Of a stretch of 64,000 nt of DNA, positions 5,900 through 55,812 are shown one piece after another. Origin of the DNA: Mytilus californianus (lineage: Eukaryota); contig NW_026262712.1 of NCBI RefSeq assembly GCF_021869535.1, positions 112,468,001-112,532,000 of the forward strand. Direction: 5' to 3'. The notes beneath the pieces were generated by a model, which saw nothing but the letters and a program-made list of their open reading frames with translations, had not been told where the DNA came from and ran no database searches. The translations under genes were made by a program, and so were the position numbers. Every line of letters starts with the position of its first letter. Position 1 is the first letter of the stretch.

Positions 5900-7730
5900 T
5901 TTAGCGACCCAAGCCTTTCGTCAGGCCACTGTAAAAGATATGCATAATTCCAAATGTACGAAAACCCAATGGGAATATCAGTTATTGTAATATCTATTGT
6001 TATAAATAATACGCTCTACATTTTTTGTAATCTTTTCATATTTTGATCTGTCGAGTTCAAACAAACAATCACATGACAATATGAATTCTGGTGTGATAAT
6101 AAAATATAATGTATCTGCTGTTTTGGATGCTCTCTGCCTCGTTGTCTGCATGACTACTTCCACCTAAAAAATCGCGTTCTTTAATGCATAACGTCAGTCC
6201 CTAATTGTCCTTAAGTTTTGGTGCTAAGACATCTTTTATTCAATACACACTCTCTCCTTCATATGATATATAAACGTCATACTGATAGTTCCTCCGGACT
6301 TTAAGCTGAACAACACGGCGAATGAATCCATAAATAGAGAATATGATCTTCAATCTTTTACATTACAACACAAGCAGCAGGGTTATTACGACAAATGTAG
6401 ATATTAAAGTTGATGGAAAAGTTAACCACATAGTACTCTTACAGTCCGCAAACAAGTCGGATAAAGAGTTGTAGGCAATAAGTGTATCAATAACTGAACC
6501 ATTAGATAATTTACATTTGTATGACCGGCTGTCCAGATTAACTTTTGTGTCTTTTATTCACCTTATCAAATCTACATTATCACAAGTGCACTCAAATGCA
6601 TTACCACCGATATACAGATGAAGTTGATGCCTTTTGTCCGCCCAGTTTCTGATGACTGAACTCACACTTGTTAATAGATTCTGTCTTATATCAAGCATCT
6701 TTATATTAGTGAGACCAGTTCACCGTTCATGAATAGTTTTGAGAAAATCTTTTGTTCAAAATAAACTTGACAAATTAAGCATTTGCTGTACAAGACCGTT
6801 TGGAAAATACCAAATATCATTTTCATATATATCCAACGATACGACAGATAAAAAATTTTGAAACAATCGGTTTCCTTGAAACTTTATTCCATCACTAAAA
6901 CCAACATTTTTCCACACACTAATGTTTTAGGGTTATGAGAAGGAAAACGATTAAACTCGTTCAATAAAAATGAGTAGTATCCTCAATCACAAATGAAAGT
7001 TCCAGATGAAGCTGACTGTTATCAATGGACCAATTTGCTTGTGAATAAGACATATCCATAAATGTAATGTTGTTGTCAGCAGGAACAATAAACATTTTTC
7101 GTGGGAAATATCTAAGGATCGTGTAGCTGACATTCATTTTCTCCAGGTATTTTGGAACTATTTGAATTAAAACCAGAAACATCTGAATTTTTCAGCATAT
7201 ATTTGACAGCCTTACAAGAAAAGTCAAATGATTTCAACCCAACGGCTTCTTCAAAAAACGTCTTGCCCCATTTAACCTTTCCCGTTAGCAAGCAAAAACC
7301 TTTTTCATTTAAAGGAGAGATGTAAACATTCCGGACGTTTAAGGGATAATAAAGACCCAGGTTCGTAGTCAACAATGCCATTCACGGATAAATCTATATC
7401 ATTATATCGGACGTGATAGTCAAAGCAAAGGTGAAATCACTACTATCTAAACTGACGTCATTAACATGACCTAAATTAATTGTAGTTATATTAGCATTAC
7501 TGAATATCCGTACCAGCTTCAATGCAGGCTTCAAAAGCATAAACGTTCCAGATAAGTATATATACGTAGATGTGGAAACGGCAGCAAGGCATACTTTTCC
7601 GAAATTACAAAGTTAAACCGACAATTTTTGAGAGCTCTTCTATGGAAGATGAAAACCTCTAAAGCGTTTTATTTTTTGACAGGCTTATTAAATAACATGA
7701 TTGGAATTGTAATTCATTAAGGTTATTCAT
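5900..7730 (-). pseudogene. TLR A, 3' part (LRRs, LRR-CT, TM, TIR), degraded
   Basis: Fragments read FIITPEFILSCDCLFELDRSKYEKITKNVERII (TIR), KERDFLGGS, GNAFECTCDN and MNNLNELQFQSCYLISLS; many frameshifts. Confidence 0.88.
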
Positions 7731-10700
7731 TCGACTTAAAATACAACTGTGATGTAAATCTTTTGTTCAAACTCTCCATTATTTTCAGGAATGGAGAGTT
7801 ATTTTCTTTTGTTCATCTTCGTTCATCCGGACGTTTTGCCCTTTGGATATTTCCATGGGCACTTTTTTAAAAAGTTTTCACCCATGGAAATAATCCTCAA
7901 GGTCGAAACGCGATATTGAATGAAGATGAAAACTTACTAAAACGACTGTTAATGGATTTAAAAAAAAAAAATAGGGATCGTAGTAATACAATGAACACCA
8001 AATAACTCATTATTAATAAACAGCTGTTATTTGCGAGTTGTAATTCCATTGTATAACATATAGTATCGTTTTTACTAAAATTTCATTACATTATCCATAT
8101 TTTGTTTTCCGATGCAAATCGTGGCTGCATTTTTGTCACGGATAGTATCCAAGGGGTAAAAACGGATATTTTCCATTGAGTGCCATTCCTCTTCTGTGCA
8201 TCTACAAAATATCAAATGTGTTTACTCAGTTGAATTCTTTTGTGATATTGAACACATTAGAATTATTCAATAAGGAAAATTAGTCTTATAGATGCATGAT
8301 TTTTTTTATTAGTTGTTTTTGGCTTTGAACTAGCTGTCAGTAACTGCGAGTACTCTCAGATCTGTACTTAGTGTCTTTTTGTTGTAGGGATGTATAAGTA
8401 CCCTGCCACGTCCACTCTGTGTTTTTGTCACTTGTTTTTGTGCTTAGAATCTATCGGATGAGTTAAGCCCTTTTCAGCTGATTTTTATAGTTTGTTCATA
8501 TGTTGTACTGTTACACCACTGTCCAAAGTTAGGGGGAGGGTTGGGCGCCCGCTAACATGTTTAACCCCGCCACATTCTGTATGTGCCTGTCCCAAGTAAG
8601 AAGCGTGTAATTCAGTGTTTGTCGTTTGTTGCCGTATATCATATTTGTTTTTATATAATGTTGTATATTATTTTATACATAAATCGGGCCGTTAGTTTTC
8701 TCGTTTGAATTGTTTTACATTTGTCATTTCGAGGCCTTTTATAACTGACTATGCGGTATGGGCTTTGCTCATTGTTGAAGGCCATACGGTGACCTATAGT
8801 TGTTAATTTCTGTGTCATTTGGTCTCTTGTGTAGTTGTCTCATTGACAATCATACTACATTTTCTTATTTCTATATTTAATTACAGATTTGATTTTAATT
8901 TTACCGTTTAAGATATCATTTGCTTGAAATTTAAAGTGTTGTATTTTGATTTTGTACAGCAAAATCGTTTGTTCCATTTTATAATAAATATACATTAACA
9001 AAAGAAATATTACTCGGATAGTTTCAACAACAGTATTGTGGTTAAATAGAATAAATAGTTCAAGAAACTGAAGTGGTGAAAATGGCGTATTCGGTATATC
9101 ATTTGATTTTTTGTTGTTATAATTTGAATATAGTGTTAATAAATAGAATTTGAGGGGGGTATGGATAACATTTGAATAAGACTTGAGTTAAATATTGGGT
9201 GGGATGGTTATTCAATTTTCAACAGAAACGCGTAACATAATCGAATTCGTTTACTGTTGTTATATGTCCAGTGGCATATATAAAAGTTATATCGGGAGTG
9301 CAAATGACGGCGTTAATCTTGAAATGTTTTAATGAAATAAAAAAAAAAATAACTCACAAATCTAGATATTAATAAATCAACCGGGACCGATGGAGTTGGC
9401 CCAAGAATATTAAAAGTATCAAAGTCAATAATTGTAGATTCTCTAACTCATATTTTAAACCTTAGTTTATGTACATGTATATTTCCAGATATTCTAAAGT
9501 ATGCAAAAGTAACTCCAATTTTCAAAGCCGGTAATAAGGATGATCCGAACAATTATCGTCCTATCTCAATTTTACATACAGTGTCCAAGATTTTTGAGAG
9601 GACTGTGTTTAAACATTTATATTCATTTTTAACTAAATACAAACTACTAGTACAACAACAATATGGATTTAGAGAAAAACACTCATGCCACCCAGCAAAA
9701 TAATTGACAAATGGTTAGAAGAATTTGACAAAGACAACTTCACTGCTGTTTTATTTCTAGATTTAAAAAAAGCATTTGATACTGTTAACCATAACATCTT
9801 ATTATCGAAACTTAATTTATATAAATGTGATGGTCACTCTGTTAAGTGGTTTTCGTCCTACCTTTCAAATAGATTGCAAAAGGTTAAAATTGGAACAACT
9901 GTATCAGGATACAATAATGTAACATTCAGGGTCCAACAAGGTTCCATATTAGGACCTTCATTATTCTTAATCAATATAAATGATCTCCCGTTTACATTAA
10001 AACACACAGAGTCTGAACTATATGCTGATGACACAACTTTGCATATATCGTCCAAATCTATTTCAAACTTAAACTCTTGCTTAAATAAAGACTTTGAAAA
10101 CGTAATTGAATGGTGTGCTAAAACAATATGATAACAAATAATAAGAAGTCCAAATGTATGCTTATGGGATCTGAGAGAAAACTTGAGAATTGTAATGATG
10201 TCTTGTGTGTATTATCGCAAAATCAGACTTTATTTGACAATATGGAAGTAGAAAAACTTCTTGGTATCCATATAGATAAAAATCTATTATGGTCAATTCA
10301 CATAGATAAAGTATGTGAGATTTTTTCAAGCAGATTATACCTGCTACGTTAAATAGATTAAAACGATACTTTCCTCGCAAAGGTCTTATCCTTTTAACAA
10401 CAGTTATATATTACCAATAATTGATTATTGTTGCACCATATGGGGTTTTACCGCAAACTGCAACATTGAGCGGATTCATAAGCTGCAAAATCGCACAGCA
10501 AGATTAATTTTGAATAAACCTTTTGATTATCCATCAATATCAATGTTTAAAGAACTTAATTGGATGACCATTTTTACACGGATAAAATATTTTCAAGCCA
10601 TTTTAATGTTTAAATGTATGAATGGGCTAGCGCCAGATTATCTTACTAGTAAATTTACTGCGTGCAGTGATCTATATAGTTATTCTCTTAGGTCAACAAC

Positions 10701-11628
10701 ATCTGGACATCTTCATTTACCAAGGCCAAAGTCTGAATACTTCAAAAAGACTTTTCAATATTCTGGTCTAATTATTTGGAATAGTTTGCCTAATGATATA
10801 AAAGATTCAAGTCATATAGAAAGCCTTAAGGTGAAATTTGCTAATCTTTTTTTCACAAAACAAAATGAGTAGACAAACATTTTTTTCACTTAGGACATTC
10901 TTGCCATGCTAGTTCTACAGTCTGTTTTCATGCTTGTGTATATAGATTTGTAATTGTGTACATCTCTATTGATTATTGTGTTATATGCATTAATTGTTAT
11001 ATGTATTAATTGTTCATTTTAATGTGTATAGGCCTCGTGTGAGATTAACAATTGTATGTAAAATGAGTTACCTTCGTTAAATAAAGAATTTATTATTATT
11101 ATAAGTAGTTTTCCACTCAATTTAAAGACTACAAAAAGCAATCTAGAAATGTTTTTAATCACGCGGGTTTTTTTTTCTAAATCTTTTTTGCCTCCTTTCT
11201 GATATTAGGTAAGAATGAAAAATATTTTCAGTTTGCTTGTATTGCTATTTAAGACTTATCTGCTAAAACATGCATAACATTTTTTTCGTTGTTATGAGCA
11301 AAGGGAAAGAAAAAAATGTTGGGGTATGCATGAAACATGAAACACTGTTTTCTTGTATAATTCTATTTGATCTAATATAATGGTTTGAAATATCGAATTA
11401 TGTGGATTATTGGGTACAACACGGGGAAATGAAAAGAAAACCATTACAAAATGAAATATTTTTTTTTATTAAATGTTATAATCTAAAGATTCGTTCTTAA
11501 TATTTAAGGTGTATTTTAAGTTAGCGAAAGTCCAAATAATTGTCCATTCCTGGGAAATAATGGGCGTCGGCCCTACGGGCCTCCGCTCTATTATTTCTCA
11601 GGAATAGACAGTTATTTGGACTTTTTCT
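7731..11628 (+). mobile_element. 3.9-kb insertion with no TSD, sub-terminal inverted repeats and long terminal hairpins (Helentron/Helitron2-like, tentative)
   Basis: Removing it restores the TLR A frame exactly. Inverted repeat ACTTAAAATACAACT (7734-7748) matches AGGTGTATTTTAAGT (11507-11521) at 14/15. Imperfect hairpins at 7812-7930 and 11526-11627. Confidence 0.7.
9352..11103 (+). mobile_element. 5'-truncated non-LTR retrotransposon (LINE, CR1/L2-like RT), degenerate
   Basis: RT motifs FLDLKKAFDTVNHNILLSKL, QGSILGPSLFLININDLP and LYADDTT, and a C-terminal FQYSGLIIWNSLP segment, split over frameshifted ORFs 9685..10872. AATAAA at ~11080 followed by a (TTA)n tail. Confidence 0.9.
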
Positions 11629-12167
11629 ATAACTGAATCCACTTCCGAAATGGTGCATAGGCATATTGTCGATTGCTAGGAAAGACAACTTTCTAAGAAC
11701 ACCGAGTGCATGATCAGAGTAGTAAAACACTGTGACAAAATCTTCTAGTAAGAGCTTATTACTCCAAATATCCAATTTTGTTAGATTTCCGATCGGAAAA
11801 AGTAGTTCTGCCGAATACACTTTAGATAAATGAAGCAAAATGTGAGACATGTCTAGCTCTGAAAGATTGCATAACCATCAAAACGATTCACTTGATAAAT
11901 TACTAAATTTTTTTTAACCTAAAAACAGTTCTATAATTGACGAAAGAATTGTTTTTAATGCTTGTGATCAGATTTGAACGCAGATCAAGATAAGTTATGT
12001 CCACTTGTAAAATTTGACGTTTAAACGTAAGTCCTCTGTCTGAACAATTAGCTACTTTAACGTTCTCTCGTCCTTTAATTAAATGTTTGATATCACAGTC
12101 AGATGAATCTAAATATTCATCACAGTTCATAACACAAAAAATATTGTATAATGATAATCATCACCAT
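11629..12167 (-). pseudogene. TLR A, 5' part (signal peptide, LRR-NT, first LRRs)
   Basis: ORF fragments DCDIKHLIKGRENVKVANCSDRGL and YSAELLFPIGNLTKLDI..MPMHHFGSGFSY. Joins in frame with the 7730 side: GGA TTC AGT TAT|ATG AAT AAC CTT. Confidence 0.88.
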
Positions 12168-23460: not shown

Positions 23461-25983
23461 CTATAGAGTTACTTGTTTGTTAGCAACTGACCCTACTGTG
23501 AATAACATTCTCAATCGTCTCCAAGTATCATCTAAATCTCCTTGATCATTCGGCCATTGTACAAGATATGCATAATTCCAAATGTACGAAAACTCGTAGG
23601 GAATGTCGGTAATTTTAATATTTTTTGTTATAACAATAATTTTGTCCAGATTTCTCGTTACTCTCTCATATTTAGCTCTGTGGAGTTCAAACAAGCAATC
23701 ATTTGACGTTTTGAACTCAGGTGTGATGAGGAAAATAATGTACCTACTCTTTTCGATACATTCGGCCTCAGTATCCAGAAGACTCTCACCACCTAAAAAA
23801 TCTCGATCTCTTATACACATGGTCAGTCCCCATTCGGCCTCAAGTCTTGGTACTAAGACATGTTTTATCCATATGACAATCTCTCCCTCATAAGACATAT
23901 ACACGTCGTACTGATAACTCTTCCGAACTTTTTGTTCAATAAAACTCTGAATTATTCCATAGACAGAGAAGGCAATCTTCCATCTCTTACTATACAACAC
24001 AAGCAGTAAAGAGATTGTACCAGATGTAGCTAACAACGTTGATGCAAAGGTTAACCACATAGTACTCTTACAATCCGCAAACAAGTGCGAGAACGAGTTG
24101 TAGGCAGTAAGTGTATCAGTAACGGTTCCATTCGATAATTTACATTTATAAGATTGACTGTCCAGATCAACTTTTGTAGTTTTTATCCATCGTATCAAGT
24201 CTAAACTATCGCAGTTGCACATAAATGCATTGCCATCGAGATGCAAAGTCATTCCATGCCGTTCTTGCATCTTATCTGCCCAATTTCTAATGGCTGAACT
24301 TACAGTTGTTAGGAGATTGTTTCTCACATCAAGCACCTTTATTTTAGTATGACCAATCAACTGTTCTGGAATAGCCTGAAGTAAATTTTTTCCTAAATAC
24401 AAACATGACAAATTTGGCATTGGTTTTAAAAACTCGTTTGGAAAATACCAAATATTATTTCTAGATATATCCAACGACTCAACAGATGTTAATACATCGA
24501 ACAACCGGTTTCCTTGTTCTTCTATTCCTTCATTAAGGTAAGCTTCTTTCCATACAACTGTTTTCAAATTGTGTTCAGGAAAACGTTTTATTTCTCTCCA
24601 GGCAGTTTCGTAGAGTCCAGTAGATATAAATGTTTCTATTCGAATTTGAAGAAAAAATAACGGCATATTGGTCCTTGCATAAGATACATCCAAATATTTG
24701 AGGTTGTTGTTTTCAGGAACTATAATCCATACTTCAGGGTAAGTGGTTAGTATTGTGTTACTCATATCGAATTTTTCTAGTGATTTTGGAAGTGTCACAT
24801 AACTACCATGATAACTATCTATCTCTAAATTGGAAATCACAGAGTTGTTCATGATATAGTTGACAGCATTATATGAATAGTCTATCGATTTTAGTAGAAC
24901 AGCTTTTCCACAAAAAGAATTAAAATCGCTAATCGTTCTTTTAGTAACAATAACAAACCGGTTTCTTTTAAAAGAAAGAGTTTGTAAACATTCAGGGCGA
25001 TCAAAGGTGAATAAAGATCCAGATTCGTAATCAACTATGCCATTATTTGATAAATCTAAATTTTCAACGCAAATTGTTTTCAGATATTTCATCATATCGG
25101 GTGTAATTGTTATAACAAAAGGTAGTTCACTGCTATCAATACTAGCGTCACTAACATGACCAAAATTAATTGTAGTTAGATTTGAATAACTGTACGGGTG
25201 TAATAAATGCAGTGCTCGTCTTAGATGCATAAATGTTCCGTGAAAATCTATTACACGGAGATGTGGAAACGGAAGCAAAACATCATCTTCCGTCCTTACG
25301 GCTTTTAAGCGACAATTTGTTAGACTAAGCTCCTGTACAAAATATGGAAACGCTTGAAATGTTGTATTAGACAAGCTTACTAAATAGCATGATTGAAAGT
25401 GTAATTCTCGAAGGTTAGTAATATGACTGAATCCCCTTCCAAAACGTGGCACAGGCATCATATCAATTCCTAAGAAGGACAACTCGCTCAGAACACCAAA
25501 TACGTCGTCGGGGTAAATAAAATCCTTATCAAAATCTATTGGTTGGGGCATATTACTTCTGATATCCAATTTTGTTAAGTTTTTAATTGGAAGAAATATT
25601 TCCGCTGAATATACTTTTGATAAATCAAGCATATTGTGAGACATGTCCAGCGCAACAAGGTTGGATAATCCTTTAAATGACTCATTAGATAAATCTTCAA
25701 GTTGGTTTTTTCCCAAAACCAGTTCTTGTAAGTACTCATAATTAACGAAAGAATCGTTGTTGATAGCTGTTAATTTGTTCGAACTAAGATCTAGAACATT
25801 GATATCTCCCGGTAAATTCTGAGGTATAAAATTCAGTCCTCTGTTTTTACAATCGGCTAATTTAACTTCCTTGGTTTTTTTAATAACATATTTGATATCA
25901 CAGTCTGATAAATGCAAGATTTTTTTACACTCAATAATCTTAACAATGTAAAAGATAACTAAATAAATCGAAATCCTCGTCAT
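23461..25983 (-). CDS. TLR: Toll-like receptor C, intact, 840 aa, single-cysteine-cluster type
   Basis: Uninterrupted ORF (track 23461..26088). The likely start is the ATG at 25983 (MTRISIYLVIFYIVKIIEC, signal-peptide-like), colinear with paralog F. It has LRR motifs (LxxLDLSxN), LRR-CT GNAFMCNCD..WI..C, TM MWLTFASTLLATSGTISLLLVLY, and TIR YDVYMSY..RDFL..FEL. Confidence 0.95.
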   Translation of the reverse strand: MTRISIYLVIFYIVKIIECKKILHLSDCDIKYVIKKTKEVKLADCKNRGLNFIPQNLPGDINVLDLSSNKLTAINNDSFVNYEYLQELVLGKNQLEDLSNESFKGLSNLVALDMSHNMLDLSKVYSAEIFLPIKNLTKLDIRSNMPQPIDFDKDFIYPDDVFGVLSELSFLGIDMMPVPRFGRGFSHITNLRELHFQSCYLVSLSNTTFQAFPYFVQELSLTNCRLKAVRTEDDVLLPFPHLRVIDFHGTFMHLRRALHLLHPYSYSNLTTINFGHVSDASIDSSELPFVITITPDMMKYLKTICVENLDLSNNGIVDYESGSLFTFDRPECLQTLSFKRNRFVIVTKRTISDFNSFCGKAVLLKSIDYSYNAVNYIMNNSVISNLEIDSYHGSYVTLPKSLEKFDMSNTILTTYPEVWIIVPENNNLKYLDVSYARTNMPLFFLQIRIETFISTGLYETAWREIKRFPEHNLKTVVWKEAYLNEGIEEQGNRLFDVLTSVESLDISRNNIWYFPNEFLKPMPNLSCLYLGKNLLQAIPEQLIGHTKIKVLDVRNNLLTTVSSAIRNWADKMQERHGMTLHLDGNAFMCNCDSLDLIRWIKTTKVDLDSQSYKCKLSNGTVTDTLTAYNSFSHLFADCKSTMWLTFASTLLATSGTISLLLVLYSKRWKIAFSVYGIIQSFIEQKVRKSYQYDVYMSYEGEIVIWIKHVLVPRLEAEWGLTMCIRDRDFLGGESLLDTEAECIEKSRYIIFLITPEFKTSNDCLFELHRAKYERVTRNLDKIIVITKNIKITDIPYEFSYIWNYAYLVQWPNDQGDLDDTWRRLRMLFTVGSVANKQVTL

Positions 25984-25991
25984 ATTGTGAC

Positions 25992-26173
25992 CTGTATATC
26001 CACAAAAGAAATTCAAAAAGCGCTTTGATACTAATAGCTTCAACAACGAACGATTAGATACATTAAAATTGAGATTTCCATGCTTCAATCATTCTGCATG
26101 AATGGATGAAATACAATAGATTTTAATGTTTTTAGATGACATAAGGGATGGTTTCTCCTTACATATTACATAC
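25992..26173 (-). other. Predicted 5'-UTR intron of TLR C
   Basis: Donor AAG|GTATGT and acceptor TACAG|GTCACAAT-ATG. The same arrangement occurs in F (52411-52614). Confidence 0.55.
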
Positions 26174-55479: not shown

Positions 55480-55812
55480 GACAATTGGTAGAGCTCATTA
55501 TTCTGAACATTTTTGCCTCTTTCAGATTTTCTCTATTTATTATGGTTCAAAAAATAATAGACAAAGCTTGCATTGTTTACCCCTATGTTCTATTTTTAGC
55601 CATGGCGGCCATCTTGGATGGCAAGTCGGGTCATCGGGCACATTTTTTAAACTAGATACCCCAATGATGATTGTGGCAAAGTTTGGTTAACTTTTGTAAA
55701 GTAGTTTCAGAGAAGACGATTTTTGTAAAAGTTAACGACGGACGACGACAGACGACGAACGCCAAGTGATGAGAAAAGCTCATTTGGCCCTGTCGGCCAG
55801 GTGAGCTAAAAA
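55480..55812 (-). mobile_element. Partial HINE/pearl-like element
   Basis: Reverse complement starts TTTTTAGCTCACCTGGCCGACAGGGCCAAATGAGC (hairpin), followed by a (GTC/CGTC)-type microsatellite. Confidence 0.65.

What the first reader, a model, noticed from the sequence alone, without database searches (positions are those of the whole stretch)
7731..11628. A TLR split cleanly by a 3.9-kb element with no TSD, sub-terminal inverted repeats and ~100-120-bp hairpins at both ends
Joining 7730 to 11629 restores the codon-perfect TLR frame (GFSY|MNNLNELQFQSCYL, matching GFSHITNLRELHFQSCYL in C), so no bases were lost or duplicated. The ends are not GT-AG, so it is not an intron. A 14/15 inverted repeat sits 3 bp from the left end and ~107 bp from the right end. 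A ~48-bp-arm hairpin (11526-11627, centre GGCCC-TAC-GGGCC) runs almost to the right end, and a second long hairpin lies at 7812-7930. Asymmetric sub-TIRs plus a 3' stem-loop and no TSD fit Helentron/Helitron2 rolling-circle elements, but these hairpins look unusually long. It may be an unannotated non-autonomous family, here with an exactly defined empty site.
Basis: partly seen in the sequence, partly recalled or inferred. Interest (0 to 1): 0.75.

Follow-up and report, generated by a model that had tools for sequence, protein, structure and literature searches.

The report
Rolling-circle-type transposon inside dead TLR gene
The 3.9-kb block that splits this mussel Toll-like receptor pseudogene is one old copy of a roughly 300-copy, non-coding Helentron/Helitron2-like transposon that later took in a LINE fragment, so it is an ordinary mobile-element insertion with a few unusual end features.

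Summary
The insertion is real, but two details of the finding are off.

- **Ends.** 36-37 other copies, five exact head-to-tail junctions and one paralogous empty site place the element at 7736-11633, not 7731-11628. Both cuts restore the TLR frame.
- **Composition.** The block is composite. About 2.1 kb belongs to the transposon. A 5'-truncated LINE (9345-11102, RVT_1) is nested in it, and it also holds a hyper-abundant repeat (about 8290-8860).
- **Family.** It has at least 260-330 copies and basic forms of 1.75-2.5 kb. The two ends co-occur in the same orientation at many loci. None of 16 full copies has a TSD.
- **Anatomy.** A 13-bp inverted repeat sits at base 1 and again just before a 108-nt near-perfect 3' palindrome, which ends 4 nt from the terminus. 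Two 5' hairpins and an optional 320-bp central tandem repeat complete it.
- **Target.** The element inserts immediately 5' of D-T-A-A-T, not between two T's.
- **Classification.** This fits non-autonomous Helitron2/Helentron (HLE2) elements. No RepHel partner carrying these ends was found, although HLE2-type RepHel genes exist in the genome.
- **Host.** The TLR is a pseudogene with at least 7 frame changes, and it was duplicated together with the insert.

The scan has noted other Helentron-like elements elsewhere in this genome. Verdict: new member of a known kind, low to moderate interest.

The parts
5914..7735 (-). Downstream (3') part of the host TLR pseudogene
   Evidence: tblastn of the intact paralog (23461-26088) gives pieces in changing frames from 7739 down to 5914.
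11634..12157 (-). Upstream (5') part of the host TLR pseudogene. Its first 5 bases on the + strand, TGAAT (11634-11638), are the target motif.
   Evidence: tblastn. TGAATCC is conserved in the TLR paralogs, so it is host sequence. It fits the family's right-flank motif D-T/G-A-A-T.
7736..11633 (+). The whole inserted block: one copy of the HLE2-like non-autonomous element with its later additions (3898 bp)
   Evidence: Family ends from 36-37 copies, head-to-tail junctions and the piecewise match to reference copies.
7736..7748 (+). 5' terminal inverted repeat (ATIR): TTAAAATACAACT, 12 of 13 bases complementary to the 3' repeat. The family consensus TTAAAATACACCT is 13 of 13.
   Evidence: I19; 13-nt exact reverse match in L069.
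7770..7800 (+). 5' hairpin 1, with an 11-bp stem. Its 3' arm and the sequence that follows repeat, in direct orientation, the right arm of the 3' palindrome (about 32 nt, 91%).
   Evidence: z -6.1; 32-nt 90.6% direct match between reference positions 339-370 and 1994-2025.
7812..7930 (+). 5' hairpin 2, a long imperfect hairpin of about 120 nt
   Evidence: I4; -29.6 kcal/mol, z -7.5; in L061 z -6.7.
7736..8222 (+). Conserved 5' module shared by all subfamilies
   Evidence: 89% identity to L061 positions 301-783; 9.0% divergence from the family consensus.
8223..9034 (+). Segment specific to the long (about 2.5-kb) subfamily. It includes a hyper-abundant genomic repeat at about 8290-8860.
   Evidence: Shared at 88-95% identity with L068, L074, L070, L072, L073, L067, L071 and L076. 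Contig depth is 4e5-1.3e6. The repeat's tail motif occurs 7 times in the window.
9035..9344 (+). Element body up to the LINE insertion point. From about 9180 it is the first part of the 320-bp central-repeat unit.
9345..11102 (+). Nested 5'-truncated non-LTR retrotransposon (LINE) fragment with decayed RT reading frames and a (TTA)n tail
   Evidence: RVT_1 at E 2.4e-17. Absent from L068 and from the paralogous copy L076. Contigs that skip 9342->11103 occur in runs X1 and X2.
11103..11398 (+). Element body after the LINE (rest of the central unit). It is followed by an internal deletion of about 390 bp relative to L061 positions 1420-1809.
11401..11633 (+). Conserved 3' module
   Evidence: 94% identity to L068.
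11507..11519 (+). 3' inverted repeat (AGGTGTATTTTAA), two bases upstream of the palindrome
11522..11629 (+). 108-nt 3' palindrome with loop centre GGCCC-TAC-GGGCC. It is followed by the last four bases, TAAC (11630-11633).
   Evidence: I1; z -10.4; consensus-like copy L061 -51 kcal/mol, z -17.7; 35 copies, near-identical.

Best explanation
Window 7736-11633 is an old copy, about 9% diverged from the family consensus, of a non-coding transposon family. The family is built on the Helitron2/Helentron (HLE2) plan and has at least 260-330 copies in this mussel genome.

**History of this copy**
- It landed in an exon of a TLR paralog without duplicating or deleting any host base. The insertion point was between ...CATTCGAC and TGAATCC..., immediately 5' of a D-T-A-A-T-type motif.
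- The TLR gene together with its insert was then duplicated; the second copy lies 140 kb away and is 94.5% identical.
- Afterwards the window copy took in a 5'-truncated LINE and lost about 390 bp. The host gene decayed.

**Proposed mechanism (inferred)**
- A RepHel (HUH nuclease plus helicase) supplied in trans by an autonomous HLE2 element nicks one strand at flank|TTAAAAT.
- It unwinds or copies 5'->3' and stops at the 3' signal, which is the inverted-repeat copy plus the 108-nt palindrome plus TAAC.
- The single-stranded circle is pasted 5' of a DTAAT site that resembles the element's own 5' end (TTAA...).
- Failure to stop gives head-to-tail multimers.

**Shown here:** exact ends, no TSD, the target motif, the hairpins, the end-to-end junctions, the lack of coding capacity, and the presence of HLE2-type RepHel genes in the genome.

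**Inferred:** that such a RepHel moves this family.
For: **Family and ends**
- Each end has more than 400 first-look candidates, of which 40 were scored, at up to 95% identity.
- Pattern counts are 330 (5') and 261 (3'), against 0 for the controls.
- The two ends are paired in one orientation, 1.5-5.4 kb apart, in 16 fetched loci.
- The ends are invariant: TTAAAATAC... and ...CTCTATAAC.
- No TSD is present in 16 full copies.
- Uninterrupted paralogs of the L045/L046 flank (in L021 and at window 55594-55703) run straight on from ...GATACCCTA, the base before that copy's first T, into ATGATGATTG....

**Target motif**
- The right-flank motif is seen in 37 copies: T at +2 in 27, A at +3 in 27, A at +4 in 27, T at +5 in 24, and never C at +1.
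- The motif is host-derived in both cases that could be tested, the TLR and the L021/window paralogs.

**Structure**
- The 13-bp inverted repeat sits at base 1 and directly before the palindrome. The palindrome folds at -51 kcal/mol, z -17.7.
- The 5' hairpins have z -6 and -7.
- A 320-bp central unit is repeated 2.5-3 times in L069 and L075.
- No ORF exceeds 101 aa in the 1.75-kb form.

**Rolling-circle indications**
- Five exact head-to-tail junctions exist. In L087 a copy's 3' part, and in L088 a nearly whole copy, is followed by a 233-nt or 133-nt 5' fragment of a second copy.
- The genome has at least 126 Helitron_like_N matches, some in open frames longer than 2000 aa.
- Two of these that I scanned carry DUF6570 plus Helitron_like_N. 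PMC11417382 gives DUF6570 as the HLE2 marker.

**Literature plan:** PMC3627910, PMC4067079, PMC7492417.
Against: - No RepHel-coding copy with these ends was found. None of the 126 Rep matches lies inside the three long (8-14 kb) end pairs or near any listed end.
- Ten Rep loci share no DNA with the element.
- Insertion is not between T and T. The base at -1 is A in 18, C in 8, T in 6 and G in 4 of 36 copies.
- The 5' inverted repeat does not form the 5'-terminal hairpin described for Helitron2. The minimum free energy is 0 in the consensus-like copy.
- The palindrome is several times longer than described ones.
- No empty-site allele was seen in reads, so the window's own empty site is inferred, not observed.
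Confidence: 0.78

Rival explanations
1. The element is moved by a site-specific (tyrosine or serine) recombinase, in the manner of a Crypton or an IS607-like element. A circular form would recombine at a short core (T)TAA shared between its own joined ends and the target, which would also leave no TSD.
For: - There is no TSD.
- The target D-T-A-A-T shares TAA(+T) with the element's first bases TTAA.
- No RepHel partner was found.
Against: - Cryptons are not known to carry terminal or subterminal inverted repeats with a 3' palindrome (my knowledge of the family, not tested here).
- The asymmetric repeat plus palindrome is the published HLE2 signature (PMC3627910).
- The base at +1 of the target varies (A, G or T) while the element's first base is always T, so the shared core is at most 3 nt.
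- Head-to-tail copies followed by partial second copies are typical of run-on replication.
- No recombinase gene was looked for or seen with these ends.
Confidence: 0.07
2. The element is a cut-and-paste TIR element (a MITE or foldback type) moved by a DDE transposase.
For: It is short and non-coding, has inverted repeats and long hairpins, and has a high copy number.
Against: - None of 16 full copies has a TSD, and the TLR length is exactly conserved.
- The inverted repeat is asymmetric: terminal on the left and 114 bp inside on the right.
- The two ends are otherwise unlike each other.
- TTAA at the left is constant while the right flank varies, so it is not a piggyBac-type TTAA duplication.
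Confidence: 0.03
3. The 3.9 kb is a chance neighbourhood of independent insertions, or a non-canonical intron, and not one element.
For: The block does hold at least three unrelated repeats: the element, a LINE and a hyper-abundant repeat.
Against: - The two outer ends recur together in the same order and orientation at many unrelated loci.
- Those loci are not TLR genes.
- The block has no GT-AG ends, and no shifted splice reading keeps the frame open (sequence).
Confidence: 0.02
4. The element belongs to a separate, undescribed lineage of single-strand (HUH-type) transposons. It would share only the general logic of Helitron-like elements, and its own nuclease would read a 5-nt target and a giant palindrome.
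For: Three departures from the HLE2 description:
- The target is DTAAT, not T-T.
- The 5' repeat is not inside a hairpin.
- The palindrome is 108 nt long.

No partner was found.
Against: - Target motifs other than T-T are already known inside Helitron2. FoHeli1/2 insert between TNAT and A (PMC5148889).
- The genome is rich in HLE2 RepHel genes.
- The remaining features match HLE2.
Confidence: 0.1

Closest known systems
Helitron2 / HLE2 non-autonomous elements (Bao & Jurka 2013, PMC3627910; HELIANO, PMC11417382)
   Same: - A short asymmetric inverted repeat, 0-2 bp from the 5' end and again immediately upstream of a 3' hairpin.
- T as the first base.
- Hairpins near both ends.
- No TSD.
- No coding capacity.
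   Different: - The 3' repeat lies 114 bp from the end, not 20-30 bp, because the hairpin is a 108-nt palindrome.
- The 5' repeat is not part of a 5' hairpin.
- Insertion is 5' of DTAAT and not between two T's.
- No RepHel partner is linked to the family.
HINE / DINE-1-type Helentron-associated interspersed elements, including oyster Cg_HINE and the bivalve pearl/MgE-type elements (PMC4067079, PMC7492417)
   Same: - A left module with the 5' repeat and a right module with the 3' repeat followed by a palindrome.
- An optional array of central tandem repeats, here a 320-bp unit present in 1-3 copies.
- No TSD.
- Bivalve host.
- High copy number.
   Different: - No microsatellite in the left module.
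- No inverted repeat complementary to the subTIR next to it.
- The target is not T-rich.
- The right module is much longer than the roughly 60 bp of Cg_HINE.
- I could not compare sequences with MgE or Repbase entries because they are not held here.
FoHeli1/2 of Fusarium oxysporum (non-canonical Helitron2, PMC5148889)
   Same: Asymmetric inverted repeats, and a multi-base target preference other than T-T (TNAT|A). Joined ends were detected for FoHeli1; here the analogous evidence is genomic head-to-tail junctions.
   Different: - FoHeli elements are autonomous and fungal.
- The termini have different sequences.
[quoted passage not shown]
Canonical Helitron (HLE1)
   Same: No TSD, a 3' hairpin, an inferred single-strand rolling-circle logic, and tandem multimers.
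   Different: No 5' TC and no 3' CTRR, no A|T target, and inverted repeats are present.

Membership tests
HLE2 (Helitron2/Helentron) non-autonomous element | No target-site duplication or deletion | tested here: met
   The flanks of 16 full copies share no repeat. TLR length is exactly conserved against 6 paralogs. A paralogous empty site fixes the 5' junction of the L045/L046 copy.
HLE2 (Helitron2/Helentron) non-autonomous element | Asymmetric terminal inverted repeats: the 5' one 0-2 bp from the end, the 3' one immediately upstream of the 3' hairpin | tested here: met
   A 13-bp perfect repeat in the consensus, at base 1 and 2 bp before the palindrome, in 35-36 copies.
HLE2 (Helitron2/Helentron) non-autonomous element | [quoted passage not shown] | tested here: met
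   A 108-nt palindrome that ends 4 nt from the terminus, z -10 to -18. It is much longer than those described.
HLE2 (Helitron2/Helentron) non-autonomous element | 5'-terminal hairpin that involves the 5' inverted repeat (Helitron2 sensu Bao & Jurka) | tested here: not met
   The first 35 nt do not fold: minimum free energy 0, z +1.3 in L061 and z +0.8 in the window copy. Two other hairpins start 34 and 77 nt inside the end.
HLE2 (Helitron2/Helentron) non-autonomous element | Insertion between T and T / T-rich target (described as usual, not absolute) | tested here: not met
   Position -1 is A 18, C 8, T 6, G 4. Position +1 is A 17, T 11, G 9, C 0. Positions +2 to +5 are T-A-A-T. Host origin of the motif is shown twice. 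Exceptions are known within Helitron2 (PMC5148889).
HLE2 (Helitron2/Helentron) non-autonomous element | An autonomous RepHel-coding partner with the same termini | tested here: inconclusive
   At least 126 Rep matches exist in the genome, including DUF6570 + Helitron_like_N ORFs. None lies near a listed end or inside the long end pairs, and none shares DNA with the element. Only 100 of the 330 and 100 of the 261 end matches were listed, and more genome DNA could not be fetched.
HINE (Helentron-associated interspersed element) | Central tandem repeats between a left and a right module | tested here: met
   A 320-bp unit is repeated 2.5-3 times in L069 and L075 and is single in most copies, including the window.
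HINE (Helentron-associated interspersed element) | Short inverted repeat complementary to the 5' subTIR right next to it, and a microsatellite in the left module | tested here: not met
   There is no stable pairing of the first 35 nt, and Tandem Repeats Finder reports no microsatellite in the left module.
Canonical Helitron (HLE1) | 5' TC, 3' CTRR, insertion between A and T | tested here: not met
   The ends are TTAAAA... and ...TATAAC.
Cut-and-paste TIR transposon / MITE | Symmetric terminal inverted repeats flanked by a TSD of fixed length | tested here: not met
Spliceosomal intron | GT-AG (or AT-AC) ends at a position that keeps the frame | tested here: not met
   Sequence. In addition, the same block is dispersed at non-TLR loci.

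The most novel reading that the evidence does not exclude
This family may mark an HLE2 sub-lineage, or a sister lineage of single-strand transposons, in mussels. Its nuclease would choose a 5-base target (D-T-A-A-T) that mimics the element's own 5' end, and its stop signal would be a giant 108-nt palindrome in place of a short hairpin. If so, it would give a natural, sequence-defined system for working out how Helentron-type enzymes recognise ends and targets, which has not been done biochemically for HLE2.
Probability: 0.25. Interest if true: 0.45.

Novelty: new member of a known kind. Interest (0 to 1): 0.27.

Why it matters
This is mostly a matter of annotation.

- It explains a 'split' TLR as a pseudogene disrupted by a known kind of transposon. 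It also shows that the disruption predates a local gene duplication.
- It gives exact ends, a target motif and a structural description for one abundant mussel repeat family. Helitron-like elements are easy to mis-annotate in bivalves, so this helps repeat masking and structural-variant calling.
- The non-T-T target, the very long palindrome and the exact head-to-tail junctions are modestly useful for understanding end recognition in Helentron-type elements.

Tried and rejected
Rejected. They would require a copy that lacks the family's last 5 bases and carries 5 extra bases at the 5' end. The TLR paralogs cannot decide between the two joins, because both are in frame and similarly alike.
2. 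**TTAA or other TSD.** Rejected.
3. **Intron.** Rejected.
4. **Search for the autonomous partner.**
   - I paired the listed exact 5' and 3' matches. Three long pairs (8.2, 9.1 and 14.2 kb) hold no Rep match.
   - BLAST of the element against ten Rep loci found nothing.
5. **Empty-site allele in reads.** Contigs of runs X2 and X10 bridge both junctions (the filled allele). No 7735->11634 joint is among the listed joints, and 1022 joints were not shown, so this is inconclusive.
6. **Chimeric empty-site search within the fetched DNA.** It gave only one usable paralogous site. The right flank of the L068 copy is just the tail of the hyper-abundant repeat and was not usable as an empty site.
7. 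**Covariation in the palindrome.** The copies differ only by single, unpaired changes from one master sequence, so no test was possible.
8. **Earlier scan notes looked up by sequence.** Blank.
9. **Table of oyster HINE palindrome lengths.** Illegible in the held supplement.
Full report
**What is at the coordinates**

- The window is AT-rich (about 32% GC) eukaryotic DNA, G000:C132:112468001-112532000 of a 1.65-Gb assembly in 175 pieces.
- It carries a tandem array of minus-strand Toll-like-receptor paralogs at about 17, 25, 37, 44, 52 and 59 kb.
- Earlier notes of this scan call the genome the California mussel. I did not check that.
- One TLR copy is interrupted. Its frame runs down to 11629 (...GSGFSY) and resumes at 7730 (MNNLNELQFQ...).
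- Removing 3898 bp restores the length exactly against all six paralogs.
- No GT-AG reading keeps the frame open.
  - right palindrome: -36.5 kcal/mol, z -10.4;
  - 7812-7930: z -7.5;
  - a third hairpin, small, at 7770-7800: z -6.1.

**It is one member of a repeated family, and the two ends belong together**

- The last 200 bp and the first 255 bp each find more than 400 first-look candidates in the genome, of which 40 were scored, at up to 95% identity.
- A 32-mer of the 5' end matches 330 places and a 33-mer of the 3' end matches 261 places, with up to 3 mismatches. The control patterns match none.
- In many loci the two ends lie in the same orientation, 1.5-5.4 kb apart. I fetched 16 such loci.
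- The shortest common form is 1.74-1.75 kb (L061, L062). A longer subfamily is about 2.5 kb (L068).

- Thirty-five of 36 other copies begin TTAAAATAC, and 36 of 37 end CTCTATAAC. In the window these positions are 7736 and 11633.
- Both excisions, 7731-11628 and 7736-11633, restore the frame (GFS-Y-MNN versus GFS-R-MNN). The paralogs fit both about equally.
The family-based choice needs nothing special.
- Three independent checks support the family-based ends:
  1. Five places in the genome carry the exact head-to-tail junction CTCTATAAC|TTAAAATAC.
  2. The copy in L045/L046 sits in another repeat. Uninterrupted paralogs of that repeat (in L021 and at window 55594-55703) read ...GATACCCTA|ATGATGATTG... 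This places the first T of TTAAAATAC inside the element.
  3. GAC|TGAATCC becomes contiguous again, as in paralogs 25k and 52k.
- A 2-bp (AC) and 1-bp (T) ambiguity remains. It does not change the inferred empty site, ...CATTCGAC|TGAATCC...

**The 3.9 kb is composite**

Against reference copies:

| Window | Content |
|---|---|
| 7736-8222 | Conserved 5' module |
| 8223-9034 | Segment shared by the long subfamily; holds a hyper-abundant repeat at about 8290-8860 |
| 9035-9344 and 11103-11398 | Element body, including one 320-bp central unit |
| 9345-11102 | 5'-truncated LINE on the + strand |
| between 11398 and 11401 | About 390 bp lost relative to L061 |
| 11401-11633 | 3' module |

- The hyper-abundant repeat has summed contig depth 4e5-1.3e6, against 5-10 for single-copy flanks, and its tail motif occurs seven times in this window.
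- The LINE matches RVT_1 at E 2.4e-17. It is absent from L068 and from the paralogous copy. Contigs of runs X1 and X2 skip 9342->11103.

**Host gene and history**

- The host TLR is a pseudogene. Against the intact 875-aa paralog it needs at least seven frame changes.
- A second TLR copy 140 kb away (L076) has the same insertion at the same base and the same flanks, is 94.5% identical, and lacks the LINE.
- The order of events was therefore: insertion, then duplication of gene plus insert, then LINE entry and decay.
- The 5' module of the window copy is 9.0% from the family consensus. The family median is 6.3% and the youngest copies are at 1.3%.
- Contigs of two other runs bridge both junctions, and no empty allele was listed.

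**Anatomy of the family (consensus-like copies L061, L062, L064)**

- *5' end.* A 13-bp repeat, TTAAAATACACCT, starts at base 1.
- *5' hairpins.* An 11-bp-stem hairpin spans +35 to +66. A long imperfect hairpin spans +78 to +196.
- *Body.* It has no ORF over 101 aa. An optional tandem array of a 320-bp unit is present in 2.5-3 copies in L069 and L075.
- *3' end.* The complementary repeat AGGTGTATTTTAA comes first. Two bases later comes a 108-nt near-perfect palindrome (-51 kcal/mol, z -17.7), followed by TAAC.
- *Shared motif at both ends.* The right arm of the palindrome recurs in direct orientation at the first 5' hairpin (32 nt, 91%), so both ends carry a similar motif.
- *No covariation test.* Across 35 copies the 3' end differs only by scattered single changes from one master.

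**Insertion behaviour**

- None of 16 full copies has a TSD.
- The left flank is only weakly A-rich.
- The right flank has a clear motif. Position +1 is A, G or T and never C. Position +2 is T in 27 of 37 copies (G in 8). Positions +3 and +4 are A in 27 each. Position +5 is T in 24.
- In both cases where the pre-insertion sequence can be inferred, the motif is host sequence: TGAAT in the TLR and ATGAT in the L021/window paralogs.
- The element therefore inserts immediately 5' of D-T-A-A-T. This resembles its own first bases (TTAA...).

**Classification**

The plan matches the published Helitron2/HLE2 and HINE descriptions (PMC3627910, PMC4067079, PMC7492417, PMC11417382):
- a terminal 5' repeat paired with a 3' repeat placed just before a 3' stem-loop;
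- T as the first base;
- hairpins near both ends;
- no TSD;
- optional central tandem repeats;
- non-coding.

Head-to-tail copies fit run-on rolling-circle replication. In L087 a copy's 3' part, and in L088 a nearly whole copy, is followed by a 233-nt or 133-nt 5' fragment of a second copy, and L089 is a dimer.

The genome holds at least 126 Helitron_like_N matches, some in open frames longer than 2000 aa. Two that I scanned have DUF6570 plus Helitron_like_N, the combination that PMC11417382 gives as the HLE2 marker.

Departures from the description:
- the target is not T-T, although FoHeli1/2 of Helitron2 insert at TNAT|A (PMC5148889);
- the 5' repeat does not sit in a hairpin;
- the palindrome is far longer than described ones, given that the whole right flank of oyster HINEs is about 60 bp (PMC7492417).

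The decisive link is missing. I found no RepHel gene between these termini, and I could not fetch more genome DNA to look further.

**Verdict**

- *Observation:* partly confirmed. The insertion, the hairpins, the absence of a TSD and the frame restoration are real. The ends are off by 5 bp, the block is a composite, and the host is a pseudogene.
- *Interpretation:* partly supported. It is a Helentron/Helitron2-type non-autonomous family by structure and behaviour, with its partner unproven.
- *Novelty:* a new member of a known kind, in a genome where this scan has already noted many Helentron-like elements on other DNA.
- *Interest:* low to moderate. The non-T-T target motif, the giant palindrome and the exact head-to-tail junctions are the only features beyond routine.

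Noticed in passing
window 8290-8860 (tail motif also at 2645, 13146, 27960, 41613, 56364, 61480): A repeat of about 570 bp with enormous copy number. Summed contig depth is 4e5-1.3e6, against 5-10 for single-copy DNA, in three runs. There are seven tail-motif hits in 64 kb. It has no tRNA-like head by ARAGORN. It is embedded in the long subfamily of the element.
   Followed up: partly
G000:C2:38957276, C88:28731926, C88:59259026, C99:80234271, C99:83723286 (L087-L090): Exact head-to-tail junctions of the family (3' end directly abutting a 5' end). In L087 a copy's 3' part, and in L088 a nearly whole copy, is followed by a 233-nt or 133-nt 5' fragment of a second copy. L089 is a dimer. L090 has the first 70 nt of the element twice, 91 bp apart.
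   Followed up: partly
G000:C2:61784195/61789001/61793814 and C99:83718451/83723303: 3' ends of the family spaced about 4.8 kb apart on two chromosomes. They are probably tandem arrays of a longer form.
   Followed up: no
G000:C165:24526925(-) and 24527008(+): The 3' 33-mer occurs on both strands 116 nt apart, with 0 mismatches. This is a palindrome whose two arms both run out to ...TATAAC, as if two 3' ends were fused head to head.
   Followed up: no
window 11486-11646 in run X7 (another species label): That run holds the family's 5' module and body (depth 11-98) but almost nothing over the 3' palindrome (0.82). Either the relative's copies have another 3' end, or the palindrome is not assembled there.
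   Followed up: no
L076 = G000:C132:112618000-112622500 (minus strand): A second TLR pseudogene copy 140 kb downstream has the same element at the same base (94.5% identical, no LINE). This is a segmental duplication that post-dates the insertion.
   Followed up: partly
window 5914-7735 and 11634-12157: The host TLR has at least seven frame changes relative to the intact paralog at 23461-26088. It is dead independently of the insertion.
   Followed up: yes
L060 (G000:C46:15824339-15827594), left flank of the element copy: This copy of the family sits at the edge of a minisatellite with a 55-bp period and at least 12 units.
   Followed up: no
window 55594-55703 and L021:2843-2952: Members of another dispersed repeat (...GATACCCTA|ATGATGATTGTGGC...). 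They serve as paralogous empty sites for the L045/L046 copy. The nature of this repeat was not examined.
   Followed up: no
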